IMG/VR virus record: IMGVR_UViG_3300050014_000823
Span: 186,001-250,000 of that record
DNA: 64,000 nt
Reading direction: 5' to 3' (one strand)
Shown: positions 32,722-39,154 of the stretch, piece after piece
Layout: every line of letters begins with the position of its first letter
Position numbering within the stretch: the first letter of the stretch is position 1
Position numbers and translations under genes: made by a program
The notes under the pieces: generated by a model
Told to the model about the DNA's origin: nothing
What the model saw: only the letters and a program-made list of their open reading frames with translations
Databases searched by the model: none

Positions 32722-33819
32722 TTATAGACTGAAATTTTTCTGCTTACGAGCCTTCTTACGAAGTTCGTTTACTTCCCTGTATGCGTCAGGATTAAACCTT
32801 TCACGCTTAACAACTGATACAAGGTGATTGAATTCGTTCTCAGTAATTACCTGTCCGATATAACCTTCTGCCTTGAGAACATAAGATTTGGGAGCACGGA
32901 GTGACTGAGACTGACCTTCGGTATCAAGTTTTGCTTCGAAGGTTAAATCAAGAATTTCTTGAATCTTTTCAGTAACATCAGCAGTCATTTTAGCTTTTGT
33001 CTGCTTCAATGCTCTTTCAAGCAAATCAACAACATTTTCCCTGTGAGTCTGCTTCAATTCCTCATATGTCTGAGTAAACTCATTCATAGTAGTTTTGTTC
33101 TTCAACTCACTAATAATTGCCAATGAACCGTAGCAGTCACGAATCATTAAATCCCATACCTGTTCAGCGTATGTGAATGAAGGAAACTTGTCTATTGCAA
33201 CAATCTCACCATCAATCAACACGATGATACCAATCAAGTTCTTTGGACGTTCAAAGTGTGCAATGAACTGTTCAAGTTTCTTGTCGAACTTCTCGAAGTA
33301 GATGTTCAAGTAGTTACCAGTACCAGACTTGGTATCTACACCTAACTTCTGAATAGCAGGGTAAATATTACCGTGACCTGATGTCTGACCAACTGCATCA
33401 AACAACATTTCACGCATAGATACGGGAATCATACGGAATTCCTGAGTTCCACGGAAGTATCCGGTCTGTCCACCTTGTACACAACCTGCGTCATGGAAAG
33501 TTGTCTGAGCACGTGGCTCAACATAACCAGCCTTTACCATACCGTGGTTCTGTGCCTGTTGCTTAGTTAAAACAGCCATCTGAGTAGGAAGAATAACTTC
33601 CTTATCCTGTTGGTTGGTAAACGTGATTTGACCATAGGTAGAGTTACTTGACACCAATGATGTCAAGGGATTCGCAAAGCGAGTATCCAATGAAAACTCA
33701 GCATCGGTTGTAAGGCATACAATCTGCATATTTAATATGCTTTGTACAATAATATTACCATCTTTATCTTTGACAGGACGGCAACCTTTCAATAATTCTG
33801 AAAAATCTTTTGTATTCAT
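32722..33819 (-). CDS. ARPP-1/DUF6569-like protein
   Basis: N......VILP......QAQNH......YV.P......AGCVQ.G core and a GIIVLIDGEIVAIDKF C-terminal segment; recognised from family patterns, not by search. Confidence 0.6.
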   Translation of the reverse strand: MNTKDFSELLKGCRPVKDKDGNIIVQSILNMQIVCLTTDAEFSLDTRFANPLTSLVSSNSTYGQITFTNQQDKEVILPTQMAVLTKQQAQNHGMVKAGYVEPRAQTTFHDAGCVQGGQTGYFRGTQEFRMIPVSMREMLFDAVGQTSGHGNIYPAIQKLGVDTKSGTGNYLNIYFEKFDKKLEQFIAHFERPKNLIGIIVLIDGEIVAIDKFPSFTYAEQVWDLMIRDCYGSLAIISELKNKTTMNEFTQTYEELKQTHRENVVDLLERALKQTKAKMTADVTEKIQEILDLTFEAKLDTEGQSQSLRAPKSYVLKAEGYIGQVITENEFNHLVSVVKRERFNPDAYREVNELRKKARKQKNFSL

Positions 33820-34376
33820 AACGTATTGATTTTAATGTTATTAATTTCACACTCTAATTTATATGCATTAAATGCTAATTCTTCTGTTTCAAATCTACCT
33901 AAAAATTTTGTTTTACCTTGAATGTTAATTCTTGAAATCCAAGGTTTTTGATATTTTTCTTTAACATACGATACTCCAACATATTTACTACTACTTTTCA
34001 TTTTTGTTCTCGCATGATGAGTATTTTCTCTTGAAGTGCACCATTCTAAGTTAGAAGAAAAATTATTTTTCTTATTTCTATCTTTATGATTTACTTCATC
34101 CAAATTATTTGGATTAGGAATGAATGCTTCTGCAATTAATCTGTGTAAACAAAATGCTTTATTTATACAATTTTTCGATAAAGTAACCAGCACATATTTA
34201 CCTTGATTAATAAACGTACCTTTCAACGAACCCTTCAGTCTTCGACTGACACCATTTCTGTTAATTTCATTTCTATCCAAACTTCTAACTCTTCCAAAAT
34301 TACTTATTTGATAATAACCCTCATATCCGACAACATCTTTCCAATTTTCAAACAATATTCTTGGGTAGTGAAACAT
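33816..34376 (-). CDS. NUMOD4-HNH-AP2 homing endonuclease
   Basis: WKDVVGYEGYYQISNFGRVRS (NUMOD4), HRLIAEAF...VNHKDRNKKNN (HNH), SKYVGVS...LGRF.TEELA..AY (AP2). Confidence 0.9.
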   Translation of the reverse strand: MFHYPRILFENWKDVVGYEGYYQISNFGRVRSLDRNEINRNGVSRRLKGSLKGTFINQGKYVLVTLSKNCINKAFCLHRLIAEAFIPNPNNLDEVNHKDRNKKNNFSSNLEWCTSRENTHHARTKMKSSSKYVGVSYVKEKYQKPWISRINIQGKTKFLGRFETEELAFNAYKLECEINNIKINTL

Positions 34377-34388
34377 ATTAATTTGCGT

Positions 34389-36032
34389 TTAAGCGTTTAC
34401 ACTAATTTTTTTAATTCTCTTAACAGGAGCAGCTTCAAGAGCAAGAACCTGGTTTTCAAGCCAACGTTTGGTGTCAATTTCAAGTAACCTTGCGTTAATC
34501 TGTGGCTGTAAAGCTGCAGGGTTGTTAATTGCCATTGTGACAACACCCTTACCTAAAGTCCTTACATTAGCACCCATTTCGGCACTGGTAATCGGTGAAA
34601 TCTGGAATGTTGGTACACTCCTTCCACTTTCTGCTTGCCAGATTGAGATAACTTCGTTAGTCAATCCATCGTAAGCGTTTTCGTAACCATCGGTTAAGAT
34701 GAAAATTGCATCGTATGGCTTTGAAGGGTTTTCTTCCTTCAAAAGTTCAATAAATGCACTTGCAATATCACTTGCAAAACCTTTAGTATCAACTCTGTTA
34801 GATTCCCTTGCAGATGCCATAAGAACCAATGAAGTGAAATCTGCAATTGCCCTTGGGGTATTCTTTGATTCGGTCTTGTCACCTGTCATTGAGATACTAC
34901 CGTCAACAATAATACCGATATTCTGGTAGAAGAAACCTGCAATTTTCTTTTTATCTGCAAGTTTTACAATTGCTGACCTTAATTCTGGTGTGAAAGTTGT
35001 TTCATAACCAGTTTTGTAAAGTGCAAGGAAGTCTGTTGCCTTTTCAACCTCAACGTGTTTTTCAACACCGAGTTTTGCGGTTGATTTGGTCTGACGGACC
35101 TGCTGGTTTACAGAAGTTACCTTCACATTCTTACGAATGAGTGCCTTTGTAGCTTCTCTCTGAACCTTAGTTGACCACAATGAGTGATACTGAGGGTGTG
35201 AAGTACTTGCAACCATACCGATAAGAACTTCTTCCGGTACTGAACTTACAGAAGTAATGTCAGTTTTTGCCTTCTGGTATTCTGACAAAAGTGGAAATTC
35301 GTTTGCAGGATACTGAACGCCAACAAAGTTAGCACCACAATCCCTCTTGAACAAGAACATCAATAACTTATATGCACGAGTATCACTACCGTTAAAGTAC
35401 TTGAGAATGTTCTTAGTTGCAATTGTCAATTCCTTGTCACTTCCGTACAAACCATTTGTGATTATGTTCTTCTGTGCAATTGAAAGCAATACTGATGTCT
35501 TTTTAACACCATAAACGTGACGTAAAATCTGAGCAATCTTGTTACGGTACTTCAATGAGTAGAATTCCAAGTTAGTTTGACCCCAGATAAAGCCAAGAAT
35601 GATTTTCCTTGACCTTTCGTTGTTAATCTTAGCATCCTTTAAGTCTACGAAAAGACGTAATACATATGGAAGACCGTTTTCACCCAAGTTGTTGAGTGCG
35701 GTAAGAACTGCCTTATCACTAAGACCATTATCATACCAGTCGATTGGATTAACAATATTACATGCGCCACCCTTCAAAGTATTTTTAAATTCGTTTAAAA
35801 GTACCTCAGACACGAACTGTCCAGTCGCACCCTTTTGACTTGCTATAATCAAAGGGAGTTCCTTAGAAAGACCGTACATCTTCTTGATTTCCTTCTGGAG
35901 AGCAATTGCTTGCTCATCCCTGCTGTGGTAGTAAGTTGCTGATGCTTTGCTACCTGATGCTGTGGTAAGACCGTCAATCAGTGTCTGTTTAACGCTTACA
36001 AGCATTTTCTGTGTTAATACCAACTTTTCCAT
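34389..36032 (-). CDS. Helical N-terminal domain plus C-terminal vWA domain protein (TROVE/Ro60-like architecture)
   Basis: MIDAS motifs IIVDGSISM and IFILTDGYEN; ~370-aa basic helical N-terminal region (INNERSRK, KYRNK); 547 aa, similar in size to Ro60. Confidence 0.65.
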   Translation of the reverse strand: MEKLVLTQKMLVSVKQTLIDGLTTASGSKASATYYHSRDEQAIALQKEIKKMYGLSKELPLIIASQKGATGQFVSEVLLNEFKNTLKGGACNIVNPIDWYDNGLSDKAVLTALNNLGENGLPYVLRLFVDLKDAKINNERSRKIILGFIWGQTNLEFYSLKYRNKIAQILRHVYGVKKTSVLLSIAQKNIITNGLYGSDKELTIATKNILKYFNGSDTRAYKLLMFLFKRDCGANFVGVQYPANEFPLLSEYQKAKTDITSVSSVPEEVLIGMVASTSHPQYHSLWSTKVQREATKALIRKNVKVTSVNQQVRQTKSTAKLGVEKHVEVEKATDFLALYKTGYETTFTPELRSAIVKLADKKKIAGFFYQNIGIIVDGSISMTGDKTESKNTPRAIADFTSLVLMASARESNRVDTKGFASDIASAFIELLKEENPSKPYDAIFILTDGYENAYDGLTNEVISIWQAESGRSVPTFQISPITSAEMGANVRTLGKGVVTMAINNPAALQPQINARLLEIDTKRWLENQVLALEAAPVKRIKKISVNA

Positions 36033-36086
36033 AGTGAATGTTTAAAAATTTACATTACAATTATTAATAAAAAACATTTCAGAGTG

Positions 36087-36116
36087 CAAATATACTATTA
36101 AATCTGAAACATCAAA
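36087..36116 (-). promoter_or_regulatory. Bacteroidota sigmaA-type promoter (TTTG-N18-TATATTTG) for the vWA-HNH-ARPP operon
   Basis: caaatata at 36087-36094 and caaa at 36113-36116. Confidence 0.65.
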
Positions 36117-36125
36117 ACATATTCG

Positions 36126-36186
36126 AAAAAAAAAACAAAAAAAATGGGCGAGTAGACACATTTCTATGTCAGTCCCCGCCCATTTT
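36126..36186 (-). terminator. Terminator closing the ncRNA operon
   Basis: aaaatgggcg...cgcccatttt stem followed by a long U-tract on the minus strand. Confidence 0.75.
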
Positions 36187-36216
36187 CTCTTCGAAAAACA
36201 CTTCTCTCTATTAAGG

Positions 36217-36310
36217 AGAAGAAGTTTAGTTGTAATTTGGTAAGTTTGTCCCTCTTCTTCATGAGAGGGATTACATTTTTCAATCTACTGTATTCACAAC
36301 AAGTTCTTCT
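36217..36310 (-). ncRNA. Handle-RNA unit 1 (Y-RNA-like; hairpin cargo)
   Basis: 5' AGAAGAACTT-GTTGTGA-ATACAGT pairs with 3' TTACAAC-TAAAC-TTCTTCT; internal TCCCTCT/AGAGGGA hairpin. Confidence 0.6.
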
Positions 36311-36552
36311 GTCAAATTGCTGCTTCAGGTGGCACGCTCCGAAGAACCCGACATCTACTCACAACAATATGTCTTTTTTTATGAAAAAATAAGCACTTCT
36401 GCTTAAAAAACCATTCTTAATCATCAAATGTTAGGCGACACGCCCCGTTTTTTGTAAAAAACACTCTGGTGCCGACAGCCTAAAAACTTCAAGCGGTGGG
36501 GTTTACTTGATTTAATTTAAATTTGGTTTAACCCTTACCACTTTTAAAACTT

Positions 36553-36707
36553 GGGGAACATTTTAATAGTATTTGTTGTTTTTCTTTTGATAGTTTAACT
36601 GACTATTGACTTTACCACTTGTCTACTTCCCCAAATTTGTTTTGTTATTTGTGGGGAAGGAAGGACTCGAACCTCCGATATTACTGTAAACACTTTTAGT
36701 TTTCCCT
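36553..36707 (-). ncRNA. Handle-RNA unit 2 containing a circularly permuted tRNA-Asn(GTT)-like domain (YrlA-like)
   Basis: Order on the minus strand: handle, T arm GGAGG-TTCGAGT-CCTTC, acceptor 3' CTTCCCC, linker, acceptor 5' GGGGAAG, D arm GAC-AAGTGGTAAA-GTC, arm ATAGT-CAGTTAA-ACTAT, handle complement. Confidence 0.75.
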
Positions 36708-36816: not shown

Positions 36817-36925
36817 TGGGGAGAGCAGGCTTCGAACCTGCAAATCATTGAGTTCAAATCAATTGCTTTACCTTTTACTGAAAACACAATCAGTTCTCTC
36901 ATCTAAGAGAGCAGTGAGTATGTAT
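36817..36925 (-). ncRNA. Handle-RNA unit 3: hairpin-closed handle fused to the 3' two-thirds of a tRNA (anticodon loop TTTGAAC)
   Basis: CTCTC-ttagat-GAGAGAACTGATTGTGTTTTCAGT, then GGTAAAGC, ATTGA-TTTGAAC-TCAAT, GCAGG-TTCGAAG-CCTGC, TCTCCCCA. Confidence 0.6.
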
Positions 36926-37090
36926 ATTGAAATTGGATTATGGTCTACATGAGAATGAGCGTGTTATCAGCATAATCCTTAACCAACCTTATTTTCTCAA
37001 TTAGATGTAAAAACTCAAAAAAATCAATATATTTGATAAGTTTTCAATATAGCCATACGAATAAAGTTTTTTTAATTAAAAGTGGTTAAA

Positions 37091-37417
37091 ATGACAAATC
37101 AAACATTCAGTGGACAATTGGGTTTTGTTATTAAAAAAATCCACGCAATTAATAAAAGCGGAAAATGGTTCTATTTTTTTAGCAATACCGATATAACTAA
37201 TACTATTTCAAATAATTACAAAATAGTTGGTGTTGATGTTAATATATTCTCTATCACAAATAACTTAAAAACGTTAATTGATATTGTTGGCTCTTTGAAA
37301 ACCAATGATAATGAATTAAATGATTTATCTATAGAACCATACCCACTATTTAAAATTCCTGAAATAACTCAAGAGAATTCTTCTGAGGAATGGTATCTGA
37401 TATTTATTACAGGTTGA
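37091..37417 (+). CDS. Hypothetical protein (inserted in the ncRNA region)
   Basis: ORF only; overlaps the 3' end of an opposite-strand ORF. Confidence 0.35.
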   Translation: MTNQTFSGQLGFVIKKIHAINKSGKWFYFFSNTDITNTISNNYKIVGVDVNIFSITNNLKTLIDIVGSLKTNDNELNDLSIEPYPLFKIPEITQENSSEEWYLIFITG

Positions 37418-37639
37418 TGCCTTATCCCATTCTGGAATTAGATTAATTATTCTTTTAATATTTTTTTCTGGAGTCCAACAACTAAGTAATCCATTCTTAG
37501 TTATATCAATATTAAAGTAAACATGCAAAACATTATCACTTGAATAACCGTGATATTTATAGTATGCAAAGAACACTCTCCTTTCATACCATCGTAGTAG
37601 CCAATACATAAATTTATTAACTGGATTATATTTTTTCAT
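37346..37639 (-). CDS. Hypothetical protein (MKKYNPVNK...)
   Basis: ATG at 37639 preceded by a GTATTTATA motif at 37654-37662. Confidence 0.45.
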   Translation of the reverse strand: MKKYNPVNKFMYWLLRWYERRVFFAYYKYHGYSSDNVLHVYFNIDITKNGLLSCWTPEKNIKRIINLIPEWDKASTCNKYQIPFLRRILLSYFRNFK

Positions 37640-37661
37640 TATTGATATATAATTATAAATA

Positions 37662-37910
37662 CTAATAATAATTATTAGCAAAACCACCAATTGCCGTTTT
37701 GTTTAAAAAGAGTTTGTTCAATTCATCTTTACTGGGTAAATACCAATCGCTATAGCTACCTAATACCAAATCAGAACACAATTTTGCAGCATAGTTTCCT
37801 GCCCCCTGATTACTGACTACAGTGTTTGTGTTCGCATTTCCAGTTCCCAATCCTGTTGCTGTTGCCCCTGTTGTAGTATTAGTTCCATTATACCATTGTA
37901 TACCTGTACT
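37662..37910 (-). pseudogene. Fragment of a DUF1566/Lcl-C (C-type lectin fold) gene
   Basis: STGIQWYNG..TGATATGLGTG..NT...AAKLCSDL...YSDWYLPSKDELNKL...GGF.NNYY*; no in-frame ATG; stops where YWSS is expected. Confidence 0.65.
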
Positions 37911-38139: not shown

Positions 38140-38212
38140 TAGCGTTGGACAGGACTCGAACCTGTGATTCCGAGCTTATGAGGCTCGTGAGATGCCGCTT
38201 CTCTACCCCGCT
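38140..38212 (-). tRNA. tRNA-Met(CAT), initiator-like 5' end, imperfect acceptor stem, CCA not encoded
   Basis: AGCGGGG-TA-GAGA..TCTC, anticodon arm CGAGC-CTCATAA-GCTCG, T arm ACAGG-TTCGAGT-CCTGT. Confidence 0.8.
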
Positions 38213-38958
38213 ATATGCTTCTCAAAATTTTCAAATTCCTTTGTTACAAAGGATTTATCGAATTTTCCTAAATCTTTTATAACATATGGTTCATACCCAC
38301 AACCAATAATTTCTTTAATTTTTAATTTATCTCTATTCTCTGTTTGTAATAATGAATGATTTTTCGATATTTTCTTATAATGCCAAGCACCATTCCATAA
38401 TACTGCAATTTTATAATCTTCTATAATTACATCTGCATCCCATCCATTAAAAATTTGTTCATTACAAAGAACCAACTTAAATTTCTCACAACATAATTTA
38501 GCAAAATATATTTCGTTTTTACTTCTTTTATTTTGTGATTTTACAGAACATAAACCACCAATTCTTTCATACCCTTTCAGTGGCATTCGGAATTTTGTGG
38601 CACATGAATGTCCACAAAATCTTTGGTTTACTTTCTTCTGTTCAAAACTATTTTCACAATATTCACAATTAATAATTTTAACCTTTTTGTTTTTTAATGA
38701 AAGTTTATCTTTTGTTCCTTGTGAATGTACTCTCTTATTAGCACAGCCTCGTGAACAATAATATATTTTCTTTTGTGGGTGTAGTTTTTCACGTTCATTT
38801 ACAATAAAAATTTTAGCACATGAAATACATTTAACCGAATAATCAACAAACTTACCATATTTTTTATCATTTTTTTGAGTATTTTGAAACTCATTTTGAC
38901 AAGAAACATTACAAAATTTATTTTTTACCAATTTTCCACAATTCAAACAATTATTCAT
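38203..38958 (-). CDS. Putative homing endonuclease: CxxC zinc-finger repeats plus a PD-(D/E)XK/Vsr-like domain
   Basis: Three C..C...(F/Y)C...C repeats; WDADVIIEDYKIAVLWNGAWH; own late motif at 38972-38980; last codons overlap the tRNA-Met 5' end. Confidence 0.7.
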   Translation of the reverse strand: MNNCLNCGKLVKNKFCNVSCQNEFQNTQKNDKKYGKFVDYSVKCISCAKIFIVNEREKLHPQKKIYYCSRGCANKRVHSQGTKDKLSLKNKKVKIINCEYCENSFEQKKVNQRFCGHSCATKFRMPLKGYERIGGLCSVKSQNKRSKNEIYFAKLCCEKFKLVLCNEQIFNGWDADVIIEDYKIAVLWNGAWHYKKISKNHSLLQTENRDKLKIKEIIGCGYEPYVIKDLGKFDKSFVTKEFENFEKHIAG

Positions 38959-39028: not shown

Positions 39029-39154
39029 AAAAGGATAATTCGTTTGTTATTTTTGTTTTAAACAATGAGGTTTCGACACCCCAACATTCTGCCTGAAAAG
39101 CGGACACTCTACTTTGAGTTAATTGTATACTGTAATAACGAACAGTTTCCTTTT
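39029..39154 (-). ncRNA. Handle-RNA unit 5 enclosing a degenerate cloverleaf (anticodon loop TTTTCAG, Glu-like)
   Basis: AAAAGGAAACT-GTTCGTTATT-ACAGT ... AATAACAAAC-GAATTA-TCCTTTT; inside: ACAAT/ATTGT stem, ACTC-aaagta-GAGT D arm, TCCGC-TTTTCAG-GCAGA arm, degenerate T arm. Confidence 0.65.

What the first reader, a model, noticed from the sequence alone, without database searches (positions are those of the whole stretch)
36553..36707. Circularly permuted complete tRNA-Asn-like domain embedded in a handle RNA
The T arm and 3' acceptor strand come before the 5' acceptor strand, D arm and anticodon arm. The 7-bp acceptor GGGGAAG/CTTCCCC is perfect and closed by an A-rich linker, and the handle is attached where the variable loop would be. 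Unlike YrlA as I know it, an anticodon-like arm (ATAGT-CAGTTAA-ACTAT, GTT) is retained, but with A at the normally invariant U33. This suggests a non-decoding mimic. Alternatively, RNase P/Z cleavage of the linker could create real tRNA ends.
Basis: partly seen in the sequence, partly recalled or inferred. Interest (0 to 1): 0.78.

Follow-up and report, generated by a model that had tools for sequence, protein, structure and literature searches.

The report
Phage Y RNA with permuted tRNA
This is a real, conserved 153-nt non-coding RNA of an uncultivated jumbo phage, in which a complete but circularly permuted tRNA shape hangs on a conserved stem ("handle"); it lies just upstream of an unannotated Ro60-like gene, so it is most likely a new variant of the known bacterial and phage Y RNAs (YrlA type).

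Summary
The element lies on the minus strand at 36706-36554. Its order is handle 5' strand, T arm, 3' acceptor strand, 20-nt A-rich linker, 5' acceptor strand, D arm, anticodon-like arm, A-rich joiner, handle 3' strand.

It is present in at least 73 of 75 related jumbo-phage loci. Across 49 distinct copies, 95% of cells pair and 26 of 33 pairs show double changes. All 7 acceptor pairs and all 5 anticodon-stem pairs covary. The tertiary Levitt pair switches between G15:C48 and A15:U48 with no exception.

ARAGORN calls none of the 49 native copies a tRNA, but calls all 49 a tRNA once they are re-permuted.

The gene 520 nt downstream on the same strand (547 aa, no Pfam hit) folds as Ro60/Rsr: a helical-repeat ring plus a vWA domain with a MIDAS motif. 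Ro60 chains are the top PDB matches (Z 12-14).

I therefore read the RNA as a YrlA-class Y RNA, which is a known kind, with several new features:
- a closed anticodon arm;
- the handle attached at the variable-loop position;
- N73-CCA encoded in the acceptor loop in 34 of 49 relatives;
- a divergent handle motif;
- sibling RNAs that carry the same handle in other topologies.

The "Asn" identity means nothing, because the anticodon triplet differs freely among orthologues. Binding to the Ro60-like protein and cleavage of the linker are untested.

The parts
36702..36706 (-). Handle helix P1, 5' strand (GGGAA); predicted 5' end of the RNA
   Evidence: Pairs with 36554-36558. 99.6% of cells pair in 49 orthologues, and two pairs show double changes.
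36698..36701 (-). Internal loop of the handle, 5' side (AAAC(N)). A4-C8 are invariant. This is the position where Y RNAs carry the Ro60-contacting CGAA-type motif.
   Evidence: Invariant columns in A2. The motif reads AAC-GAAA in 16 of 49 copies, AAC-GUAA in 7 of 49, and AAC-UAAA in the window. Compared with GNCGAAN0-1G of PMC4201824.
36688..36697 (-). Handle helix P2, 5' strand (AAAAGTGTTT)
   Evidence: Pairs with 36565-36574. 10 bp are predicted by RNAalifold, and 5 of the 6 tested pairs show double changes, for example TTCGT/ACGAA in L058.
36677..36687 (-). Conserved single-stranded joiner (ACAGTAATATC). CAG-A is invariant. The last base is C48, the Levitt partner of G15.
   Evidence: Invariant columns. 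The Levitt pair is C:G in 41 copies, U:A in 7, and unpaired in none.
36660..36676 (-). T arm (GGAGG-TTCGAGT-CCTTC)
   Evidence: 100% of cells pair, and 3 of 5 pairs show double changes. The T loop TTCRANT is conserved.
36653..36659 (-). 3' strand of the 7-bp acceptor stem (CTTCCCC)
   Evidence: All 7 pairs covary with 36626-36632.
36633..36652 (-). Linker that closes the acceptor stem. It begins ACAA in the window. Relatives have N73-CCA in 34 of 49 copies, and linker lengths of 5-23 nt.
36626..36632 (-). 5' strand of the acceptor stem (GGGGAAG), followed by U8 and A9 (36625-36624)
36608..36623 (-). D arm (GACA-AGTGGTAA-AGTC), with A14, G15, G18, G19 and A21
   Evidence: 3-bp stem. Pair 11:24 is C:G in 25 copies, A:U in 22 and U:A in 2. 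Pair 13:22 is unpaired, as in many tRNAs.
36590..36606 (-). Anticodon-like arm (ATAGT-CAGTTAA-ACTAT)
   Evidence: All 5 pairs covary and 98.8% of cells pair. The loop is 7 nt, with C32 in 37 of 49, U33 in 35, A37 in 43 and A38 in 46. The triplet is hypervariable.
36575..36589 (-). A-rich single-stranded joiner between the anticodon-like arm and the handle
36554..36574 (-). Handle 3' strand: P2 3' strand (36565-36574), internal loop (36559-36564) and P1 3' strand TTCCC (36554-36558)
34389..36032 (-). Gene for a 547-aa Ro60/Rsr-like protein (helical-repeat ring plus vWA with MIDAS D377-x-S379-x-S381). Presumed protein partner.
   Evidence: No Pfam, PHROG or PDB sequence hit. Neighbours in the ESM Atlas are TROVE clusters. 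For the AF2 model, the top 13 Foldseek hits are all Ro60, and VIA-align gives Z 11.7-14.3 over residues 16-535.
32722..33819 (-). Gene for a 365-aa ARPP-1-domain protein. Conserved companion of the Ro60-like gene.
   Evidence: PF20208, E 3.7e-15. It sits directly downstream of the Ro60-like gene in 63 of 75 loci, directly downstream in four distant contexts, and one small gene further on in a fifth.

Best explanation
The element is a phage-encoded Y RNA of the YrlA kind.

Proposed structure and mechanism:
- The ends of a roughly 153-nt transcript pair into a stem-bulge-stem handle: P1 of 5 bp, an internal loop with invariant AAAAC, and P2 of 10 bp.
- Conserved single strands tether this handle to a circularly permuted tRNA-shaped module.
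- The handle is the binding site for the Ro60-like ring protein encoded 520 nt downstream on the same strand (inferred).
- The tRNA-shaped module folds into the tRNA L-shape. The fold is shown by covariation, including the Levitt pair.
- The module serves as the effector end that recruits tRNA-recognising proteins to the Ro60-like particle (inferred by analogy with Y RNAs that tether Ro60 to PNPase).
- In most relatives the acceptor loop encodes N73-CCA and the stem has the canonical 7 bp. RNase P probably nicks the loop there, giving a two-piece RNA with a tRNA-like CCA end, as published for M. smegmatis YrlA (inferred).
- In the window copy the CCA has decayed to CAA and U33 is A, so this copy looks least like a decoding tRNA.
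For: The structure is real.
- Covariation in all seven helices and in the tertiary 15:48 pair; independent RNAalifold prediction.
- Found in at least 73 of 75 loci and once per genome in 67 viral contigs.
- The tRNA shape holds: all 49 re-permuted copies are called tRNA and none of the 49 native copies is.

The link to Ro60.
- The adjacent same-strand gene has the Ro60 fold over its full length and an invariant MIDAS motif.
- YrlA RNAs are defined as lying within 4 kb of Ro60 on the same strand, in the order 5' motif, T arm, acceptor-like stem-loop, D arm. They show Levitt-pair covariation and are known in phages (PMC4201824; bioRxiv 10.1101/312249; PMC12135203).
- A distant Ro60-like gene (P0140) has the same permuted RNA, with its anticodon arm, about 100 nt upstream (L139:97-244, 53.9 bits).
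- More distant loci, L140 and L143, carry the handle motif around tRNA-like cargo upstream of the same gene pair.

Cleavage of the linker.
- N73-CCA is encoded in 34 of 49 copies. M. smegmatis YrlA, with a 7-bp stem, is cut by RNase P and receives CCA in vivo (PMC4201824).

Expression.
- A peat metatranscriptome holds contigs on 36501-36686 and an exact match on 36192-36323, but none on the flanking ORFs.
Against: - No Rfam family for Y RNAs matches, even at E<=10 on a 581-nt stretch.
- The published Ro60 motif GNCGAAN0-1G is only approximated. CGAA is present in 16 of 49 copies; the window has CUAA.
- The protein has no sequence-level link to TROVE. Profile searches of 1.8 billion proteins stay within an unannotated family, and ten distant members give no TROVE hit. 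The Ro60 assignment therefore rests on a predicted fold (pLDDT 73, TM about 0.4).
- Canonical YrlA has no anticodon loop, and its anticodon stem is the route to the handle. Here the topology differs.
- RNA-protein binding, transcript ends and cleavage were not observed. Two metatranscriptome contigs span the acceptor loop uncut, and the library could hold DNA.
Confidence: 0.72

Rival explanations
1. It is a permuted pre-tRNA that matures into a working, aminoacylated tRNA. Either the handle is excised and the ends are ligated (as with the permuted tRNA genes of Cyanidioschyzon merolae), or RNase P and 3' trimming open the acceptor loop to give a two-piece tRNA whose handle projects like a long variable arm.
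For: - The stem has the canonical 7 bp, and N73-CCA is encoded in 34 of 49 copies.
- The loop is 7 nt with C32, U33, A37 and A38 in most copies, and all tertiary nucleotides are present.
- ARAGORN accepts every re-permuted copy.
- The same handle also flanks normally ordered tRNAs at their acceptor ends, which looks like a leader-trailer pair (window 39152-39031; L140).
- The variable-arm position is where class II tRNAs tolerate long extensions (established knowledge).
Against: - The 'anticodon' is not conserved among orthologues: 26 different loops in 49 copies, including tta.
- 14 of 49 copies, the window's among them, lack U33.
- The window's CCA has decayed.
- The junction is a 4-nt/6-nt internal loop, not a bulge-helix-bulge. 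No splicing endonuclease or RNA ligase was found among the roughly 35 window ORFs scanned against Pfam or PHROGs.
- The handle sequence is far more conserved than an excised spacer would need to be.
Confidence: 0.1
2. The handle is a real RNA module but not a Ro60 site. It may be bound by another factor, for example the conserved ARPP-1 protein or a host enzyme. Or it may be a processing or stability signal shared by a family of phage tRNA-like RNAs, with the Ro60-like gene merely a neighbour.
For: - The handle motif differs from the published Ro60-binding motif (against PMC4201824).
- The ARPP-1 gene is as tightly linked to the RNA cluster as the Ro60-like gene is.
- The handle occurs in four different topologies, one of them closed by a loop.
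Against: - Co-location and same-strand arrangement with a Ro60-fold gene hold across distant relatives, which is the defining signature of Y RNAs (PMC4201824).
- A stem-bulge-stem with a conserved 5' strand is the Y RNA design (PMC12135203).
Confidence: 0.13
3. It is a two-piece (permuted) tmRNA-like gene.
For: Weak Rfam matches to tmRNA_permuted (19.7 bits) and tmRNA (13.1 bits) over the T arm, the acceptor stem and the linker. The order 'T arm, 3' acceptor, CCA, spacer, 5' acceptor' is that of permuted tmRNA genes.
Against: - The scores are far below the gathering score of 47 bits.
- G3:U70 is present in only 2 of 49 copies (columns 54:83).
- Full D and anticodon arms are present, which tmRNA lacks.
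- No tag frame or pseudoknots; ARAGORN finds no tmRNA.
Confidence: 0.02
4. It is a decayed remnant of two tandem tRNA genes (the 3' half of one and the 5' half of the next) with no function of its own.
For: The layout 'T arm, 3' acceptor, ACCA, spacer, 5' acceptor, D arm, anticodon arm' is what a tRNA dimer junction looks like. A dimeric-tRNA origin has been proposed for YrlA (bioRxiv 10.1101/312249).
Against: The 3' and 5' acceptor strands covary at all 7 positions. P1, P2 and the Levitt pair covary too. The element is kept in at least 73 of 75 loci whose neighbouring protein is only 61-87% identical. This is selection on the permuted fold, not decay.
Confidence: 0.01

Closest known systems
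YrlA Y RNAs (Salmonella Typhimurium, Mycobacterium smegmatis, mycobacteriophages; Chen et al. 2014, PMC4201824; structure 6CU1, bioRxiv 10.1101/312249)
   Same: - Encoded close to a Ro60-type gene, upstream and on the same strand.
- The 5' and 3' ends pair into a stem with a conserved 5'-strand motif.
- The order is T arm, closed acceptor-like stem-loop, UA, D arm, which is a circularly permuted tRNA.
- tRNA tertiary nucleotides are present and the Levitt pair covaries.
- M. smegmatis YrlA has a 7-bp acceptor stem, is cut by RNase P and receives CCA.
   Different: - Here a closed anticodon-like hairpin with a 7-nt loop follows the D arm, and the handle leaves from the variable-loop position. 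In YrlA the anticodon stem itself is formed by the two ends and there is no anticodon loop.
- N73-CCA is already encoded in most copies.
- The handle motif is AAAAC...GUUUACAGUAA rather than GNCGAAN0-1G.
- No Rfam match.
- The partner protein is too divergent for the Pfam TROVE model.
Deinococcus radiodurans Yrn1
   Same: A Ro60-bound Y RNA that can be drawn with a T arm and a possible 5-bp 'anticodon arm' (PMC4201824).
   Different: Yrn1 has a 6-nt loop, no clear D arm and the opposite orientation of the arms. The tRNA likeness here is complete and supported by covariation.
Yrl1/Yrl2 of Thermus phage phiLo with phage Ro60 (PMC12135203; PDB 9KOP, 9L5Y)
   Same: Phage-encoded Y-like RNAs lie directly upstream of a phage Ro60. 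They have a stem-bulge-stem design with a CGAA-type motif. The phiLo Ro60 is the best structural match to the window's protein (Z 14.3).
   Different: A search of the phiLo paper for 'tRNA-like' found no occurrence, so no tRNA-like module appears to be reported for Yrl1/Yrl2. The host is thermophilic, and the protein is recognisable as TROVE.
Circularly permuted tRNA genes of Cyanidioschyzon merolae, other algae and Thermofilum pendens
   Same: The 3' half precedes the 5' half. The acceptor stem is closed by a linker, and the leader and trailer pair with each other.
   Different: Those RNAs have a bulge-helix-bulge junction cut by the splicing endonuclease and become normal decoding tRNAs with fixed anticodons. 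Here there is no BHB, the handle is strongly conserved, and the anticodon is not conserved.
Two-piece (permuted) tmRNA
   Same: The gene order around the acceptor stem is the same, with encoded CCA followed by a spacer and the 5' acceptor strand.
   Different: No G3:U70, no tag reading frame and no pseudoknots. Full D and anticodon arms are present.

Membership tests
YrlA-type Y RNA | Encoded within about 4 kb of a Ro60/Rsr gene, on the same strand | tested here: met
   The RNA ends at 36554 and the gene starts at 36032 on the same strand. The protein has a Ro60 fold. The Ro60 assignment rests on predicted structure only.
YrlA-type Y RNA | The 5' and 3' ends pair into a stem that carries the GNCGAAN0-1G (CGAA) Ro60-contact motif in the 5' strand | tested here: inconclusive
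   A stem, internal loop and stem are present and covary. The motif reads AAAAC-GAAAAG in 16 of 49 copies and AAAAC-UAAAAG in the window, so CGAA is not conserved.
YrlA-type Y RNA | T arm, then closed acceptor-like stem-loop, then UA, then D arm, with tRNA tertiary nucleotides and a covarying Levitt pair | tested here: met
   all helices are supported, and the 15:48 pair is C:G in 41 copies, U:A in 7 and unpaired in none.
YrlA-type Y RNA | The anticodon-stem equivalent is formed by the 5' and 3' strands and leads to the Ro60 module; there is no anticodon loop | tested here: not met
   A closed 5-bp hairpin with a 7-nt loop occupies the anticodon position (5 of 5 pairs covary). The handle leaves between this hairpin and the T arm.
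YrlA-type Y RNA | Bound by Ro60/Rsr in vivo; modified by TruB/DusA | not testable with these tools
   Needs immunoprecipitation and mapping of modifications.
YrlA-type Y RNA | Matches a curated covariance model of the family | tested here: not met
   No Y RNA family appears among the Rfam 15 matches at E<=10. The covariance models of Chen et al. were not available.
Ro60/Rsr (TROVE) protein, for the 547-aa neighbour | Helical-repeat ring followed by a vWA domain with a MIDAS motif | tested here: met
   In the AF2 model, helices run from 8 to 361 and an alpha/beta domain from 371 to 534. Ro60 chains are the top 10-13 matches over the full length. DxSxS is invariant.
Ro60/Rsr (TROVE) protein, for the 547-aa neighbour | Sequence match to Pfam TROVE (PF05731) | tested here: not met
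   No hit for the protein, or for ten distant family members. No hit in PDB sequence searches.
Canonical tRNA | Linear cloverleaf recognised by tRNA finders | tested here: not met
   ARAGORN calls none of the 49 native copies. It calls all 49 only after artificial re-permutation.
Canonical tRNA | Anticodon identity conserved among orthologues; U33 | tested here: not met
   26 different loops in 49 orthologues. U33 is present in 35 of 49, and the window has A33.
Permuted tRNA genes (algal/archaeal type) | Bulge-helix-bulge motif at the leader-trailer junction | tested here: not met
   The junction is P1 (5 bp), an asymmetric 4-nt/6-nt internal loop, then P2 (10 bp).
Permuted tmRNA | G3:U70 alanine identity pair, a tag reading frame, and a score above the Rfam threshold | tested here: not met
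   G3:U70 is present in 2 of 49 copies. The Rfam score is 19.7 bits against a gathering score of 47.

The most novel reading that the evidence does not exclude
The Ro60-like/ARPP-1 gene pair and its several 'handle' RNAs may form one modular system. The same protein-binding handle displays tRNA-shaped modules in several circular permutations: joined at the acceptor ends, at the variable loop, or in place of the D arm. The anticodon triplets of these modules change freely between phages while the loop geometry is kept.

This would fit tRNA baits, decoys or sensors aimed at host anticodon nucleases and other tRNA-targeting defences. Alternatively, it would fit Ro60-tethered, RNase P-opened two-piece tRNAs that can still be charged.

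The finding's RNA also looks like a preserved intermediate of the proposed origin of YrlA from a tRNA dimer: the T arm and CCA of the first tRNA, a spacer, then the 5' acceptor strand, D arm and anticodon arm of the second.
Probability: 0.15. Interest if true: 0.85.

Novelty: new variant of a known kind. Interest (0 to 1): 0.6.

Why it matters
Y RNAs that mimic tRNA are known, but what their tRNA end recruits is still an open question. This phage clade offers several things that bear on it.
- A Y-type RNA whose mimic is a complete cloverleaf, including an anticodon loop and, in most members, an encoded CCA.
- Natural permutations of the same handle-plus-tRNA design within one operon.
- A partner protein that standard annotation misses: a family of at least 377 clusters at 50% identity, all either unnamed or called 'hypothetical'.
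- A conserved, uncharacterised ARPP-1 companion gene.

Together these give a compact set of constructs for testing Ro60-RNA recognition, RNase P processing of Y RNAs and the dimeric-tRNA origin model. They also show that Ro60 systems are more widespread in phages than TROVE-based counts suggest.

Tried and rejected
- **Genome-wide promoter.** I first took the recurring motif AACTGATTGTGTTTTCAGTAA for a phage promoter. It occurs only in this RNA cluster and its flanks pair with covariation, so I rejected that.
- **Self-cleaving ribozyme or intron.** The CUGA in the motif is not conserved, there is no hammerhead core, no BHB and no Rfam hit, so I rejected this reading of the handle.
- **tmRNA.** Rejected; see the rival explanations.
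- **Single-sequence folding.** Folding the window copy alone gave a different, insignificant structure (z -1.45). The fold shows only in the comparative analysis.
- **BLASTN against GenBank phages.** Nothing found.
- **Sequence searches for the 547-aa protein.** Pfam, PHROGs, PDB by sequence and by profile, a word-indexed search and an exhaustive profile search never reached an annotated TROVE protein.
- **Sigma-70 promoter and terminator scan.** At background level.
- **RNA-seq.** Only assembled contigs of one peat metatranscriptome were available. They show presence but neither transcript ends nor cleavage. One contig ends in Illumina adapter 7 nt inside the predicted 5' end, which is too weak to use.

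Full report
**What is there.**

Read on the minus strand, window 36706-36554 has this order:
- GGGAA (P1 5' strand);
- AAAC-N bulge;
- AAAAGTGTTT (P2 5' strand);
- ACAGTAATAT plus C48;
- T arm GGAGG-TTCGAGT-CCTTC;
- CTTCCCC (3' acceptor strand);
- a 20-nt A-rich linker that begins ACAA;
- GGGGAAG (5' acceptor strand);
- TA;
- D arm GACA-AGTGGTAA-AGTC;
- A26;
- ATAGT-CAGTTAA-ACTAT (anticodon-like arm);
- a 15-nt A-rich joiner;
- AAATACTATT (P2 3' strand);
- AAAATG;
- TTCCC (P1 3' strand).

ARAGORN finds no tRNA or tmRNA anywhere in the window. At gathering score, Rfam reports only two tRNA-like matches elsewhere. Here it gives only a weak partial match to permuted tmRNA over the T arm and acceptor stem (19.7 bits against a threshold of 47).

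**Is it real?**

The window comes from a 299-kb uncultivated jumbo phage (peat metagenome). I used the downstream 547-aa protein to fetch 75 related viral loci, with protein identity of 61-100%.
- A T arm plus 7-nt 3' acceptor strand, followed 5-23 nt later by its complement, was found in 70 of the 75 loci with a simple pattern. A covariance model found three more.
- The handle pattern occurs once per contig in 67 viral contigs. It also occurs in two short contigs binned with Bacteroidota MAGs.

The 49 distinct copies align cleanly (A2). On my structure:
- 95.4% of cells pair, against 76.5% in shuffles;
- 26 of 33 pairs change on both sides;
- the covariation score is 0.49, against 0.14 in shuffles and at most 0.09 when the partners are slid.

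Per helix, the numbers of pairs with double changes are:

| Helix | Pairs with double changes |
|---|---|
| Acceptor stem | 7 of 7 |
| Anticodon-like stem | 5 of 5 |
| P2 (six pairs tested) | 5 of 6 |
| T stem | 3 of 5 |
| D stem | 3 of 4 |

The base just 5' of the T stem and D-loop position 15 form C:G in 41 copies and U:A in 7, with none unpaired. This is the Levitt pair of tRNA, so the L-shaped tertiary fold is under selection. RNAalifold predicts the same helices without my input and extends P2 to 10 bp.

After re-permutation (5' acceptor strand, D arm, anticodon arm, a 4-5-nt junction taken from the native flanks, T arm, 3' acceptor strand, N73-CCA), ARAGORN calls a tRNA in all 49 copies with all seven junction choices. 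It calls none of the 49 native sequences.

**The neighbourhood explains it.**

The next gene downstream on the same strand (34389-36032, 547 aa) has no Pfam, PHROG or PDB sequence match. Its nearest protein-language-model neighbours are TROVE/Ro60 clusters.

An AlphaFold model built on 26 family members (pLDDT 73) shows a helical-repeat region followed by an alpha/beta domain.
- Its 13 best Foldseek matches in the PDB are all Ro60/Rsr chains aligned over the full length.
- VIA-align gives Z 11.7-14.3 for ten Ro60/TROVE entries over about 400 aligned residues. The best is the Ro60 of Thermus phage phiLo. Hits that cover only the vWA domain score lower.
- The MIDAS signature D377-x-S379-x-S381 is invariant.

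Profile searches show a large family: 368 and 377 proteins or clusters. Of the 120 listed, none carries a Pfam domain, and the only source names are 'hypothetical protein'. Ten distant representatives have no TROVE hit. This is therefore a cryptic Ro60-like family.

An ARPP-1-domain gene (32722-33819) is linked to it throughout:
- It follows the Ro60-like gene directly in 63 of 75 close loci.
- It follows directly in four distant contexts, and one small gene further on in a fifth. One of the four looks chromosomal.
- In the window, an HNH endonuclease gene (33816-34376) is inserted between the two.

**Comparison with the literature.**

Chen et al. (PMC4201824) defined YrlA Y RNAs by these features:
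- they lie within 4 kb of Ro60 and on the same strand;
- they have a 5' motif GNCGAAN0-1G;
- an optional V hairpin is followed by a T arm, an acceptor-like stem-loop and a D arm;
- the Levitt pair covaries.

They found YrlA RNAs in 254 bacteria and 22 phages. They also showed that M. smegmatis YrlA, which has a 7-bp acceptor stem, is cut by RNase P and receives CCA in vivo.

The crystal-structure paper (bioRxiv 10.1101/312249) calls YrlA RNAs circularly permuted tRNAs with a closed acceptor stem. It states that YrlA lacks the anticodon loop, and that the anticodon stem is formed by the two ends. It also relays a model in which YrlA arose from a tRNA dimer. Phage Ro60 with upstream Y-like RNAs has been characterised in phiLo (PMC12135203), and ROT/TROVE proteins with tRNA-like partners have been noted in some jumbo phages (PMC7824862).

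The finding therefore belongs to a known kind.

**What is different.**

1. A closed, covariation-supported anticodon-like hairpin follows the D arm, and the handle leaves from the variable-loop position. The mimic is a complete cloverleaf.
2. The loop keeps tRNA geometry: 7 nt, C32 in 37 of 49, U33 in 35, A37 in 43 and A38 in 46. The triplet is free, with 26 different loops; ctt, gtt, att, tga, tta and atg are the commonest. 'tRNA-Asn' is therefore not an identity, and the window's A33 is a minority state.
3. N73-CCA is encoded directly after the 3' acceptor strand in 34 of 49 copies (GCCA 18, ACCA 14, TCCA 2). Seven copies have a tight 5-nt loop without CCA, and the window has ACAA. With the strict 7-bp stem, this suits RNase P recognition. 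It also looks like a fossil tRNA-dimer junction.
4. The handle consensus (G1, A4-C8, T15, T18, T19, C21-A22-G23, A25 invariant) only approximates the CGAA motif.
5. The same handle recurs in the cluster in other arrangements:
   - Open, around a normally ordered tRNA joined at its acceptor ends (39152-39031, 35.6 bits). In relatives, ARAGORN calls this tRNA with 14 different anticodons.
   - Open, around a small cargo (38056-37981).
   - Closed by a loop and replacing the D stem of a normally ordered tRNA-like RNA. In 36 of 38 distinct copies, a 7-bp acceptor stem pairs perfectly across the handle, with covariation.
   - Probably also at 36310 to about 36218, which a metatranscriptome contig matches exactly.

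A distant Ro60-like gene (P0140) has the same permuted RNA, anticodon arm included, about 100 nt upstream (L139:97-244, 53.9 bits). Still more distant loci (L140, which is GC-rich, and L143) have the handle motif around tRNA-like cargo upstream of the same gene pair. The association of handle RNAs with this protein family thus extends well beyond the close clade.

**Expression.**

A peat metatranscriptome holds three contigs:
- a 186-nt contig on 36501-36686 with 5 differences;
- contigs of relatives that span the acceptor loop;
- an exact 132-nt match on 36192-36323.

Its depth is zero on the flanking coding regions 35900-36127 and 38294-38863. This fits abundant stable RNAs. But these are assembled contigs, DNA carry-over cannot be excluded, and neither ends nor nicks can be read from them.

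**Mechanism, with what is shown and what is inferred.**

- Shown: the secondary structure and the key tertiary pair; conservation; linkage to a Ro60-fold gene; tRNA-finder acceptance after re-permutation.
- Inferred: the handle binds the Ro60-like ring.
- Inferred: the tRNA-shaped end recruits tRNA-binding factors.
- Inferred: RNase P opens the loop in the copies that carry CCA.
- Not supported: a decoding role (no conserved anticodon, and U33 is missing in 14 of 49 copies) and a tmRNA role (G3:U70 in 2 of 49 copies).

**Verdict.**

The element is real and interesting, and it is a new variant of a known kind (a YrlA-type Y RNA). Its partner protein is not annotated in any database I searched. 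I found no prior report of the complete cloverleaf, or of the same handle in several topologies, in the papers I read.

Noticed in passing
window 34389-36032 (-) and 32722-33819 (-); L139, L140, L142, L143, L145: A cryptic Ro60-like gene (no Pfam TROVE hit) is followed by an ARPP-1 (PF20208) gene. The ARPP-1 gene comes directly after it in 63 of 75 close loci and in four distant contexts, and one small gene further on in L139. One distant context (L142) has bacterial-looking neighbours: TetR, MFS and a protein kinase. The 2022 ARPP paper (PMC9503650) lists three other two-gene contexts for ARPP, not this one.
   Followed up: partly
window 39152-39031 (-): A handle RNA whose cargo is a normally ordered tRNA-like sequence joined to the handle at its acceptor ends (Rfam tRNA 36.4 bits at 39059-39128; CM R1 35.6 bits). 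In relatives, ARAGORN calls this tRNA with 14 different anticodons, although the acceptor stem is similar.
   Followed up: partly
window 38056-37981 (-) and about 36310-36218 (-): Two short handle RNAs with small or hairpin cargo, comparable to YrlB. The second lies just upstream of the Ro60-like gene and is matched exactly by a metatranscriptome contig covering 36192-36323.
   Followed up: partly
window 37944-36817 (-): A third design: a normally ordered tRNA-like RNA (GGGGAGA ... TCTCCCC-A) in which a loop-closed copy of the handle replaces the D stem. 36 of 38 distinct copies in relatives keep a perfect 7-bp acceptor stem across the handle, with covariation. In the window this RNA is interrupted by an insertion.
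   Followed up: partly
window 36919-37910: A 992-bp insertion sits inside the handle of the RNA above. It carries small ORFs, one of which I took for a DUF1566-like fragment from its translation alone (no domain search). A contig of run X18 joins 36918 directly to 37911, and a soil metagenome (X3) has the same piece, with the same ends, in a different context. This suggests a mobile or recombined segment.
   Followed up: partly
window 38141-38211 (-) and 38203-38958 (-): A tRNA-Met(CAU)-like gene has two A-G mismatches in its acceptor stem (3' strand CCAACGC). In the listed loci this variant co-occurs with a 251-aa Cys-rich ORF, which I suspect is a homing endonuclease (no family hit). The ORF's stop overlaps the 5' end of the tRNA. 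The ORF is present in 13 loci; loci without it have a normal tRNA-Met that ARAGORN accepts.
   Followed up: partly
window 33816-34376 (-): An HNH endonuclease gene is inserted between the Ro60-like and ARPP-1 genes. It is present in only 9 of 75 related loci, so it is a sporadic mobile insertion.
   Followed up: yes
window about 36540-36400 (-): Conserved non-coding stretch between the Y RNA and the next handle RNA. It has a hairpin with a variable insert, then a long-range helix (AGGCTGTCGGCAC ... GTGTCGCCT) whose two sides change together in L003 and L019. There is no Rfam match and the function is unknown.
   Followed up: no
L076, L077 (genome contigs): The only cellular-genome matches to the handle pattern are two contigs of 2.3-2.5 kb binned in Bacteroidota MAGs. 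They are probably phage contigs and hint weakly at a Bacteroidota host.
   Followed up: no
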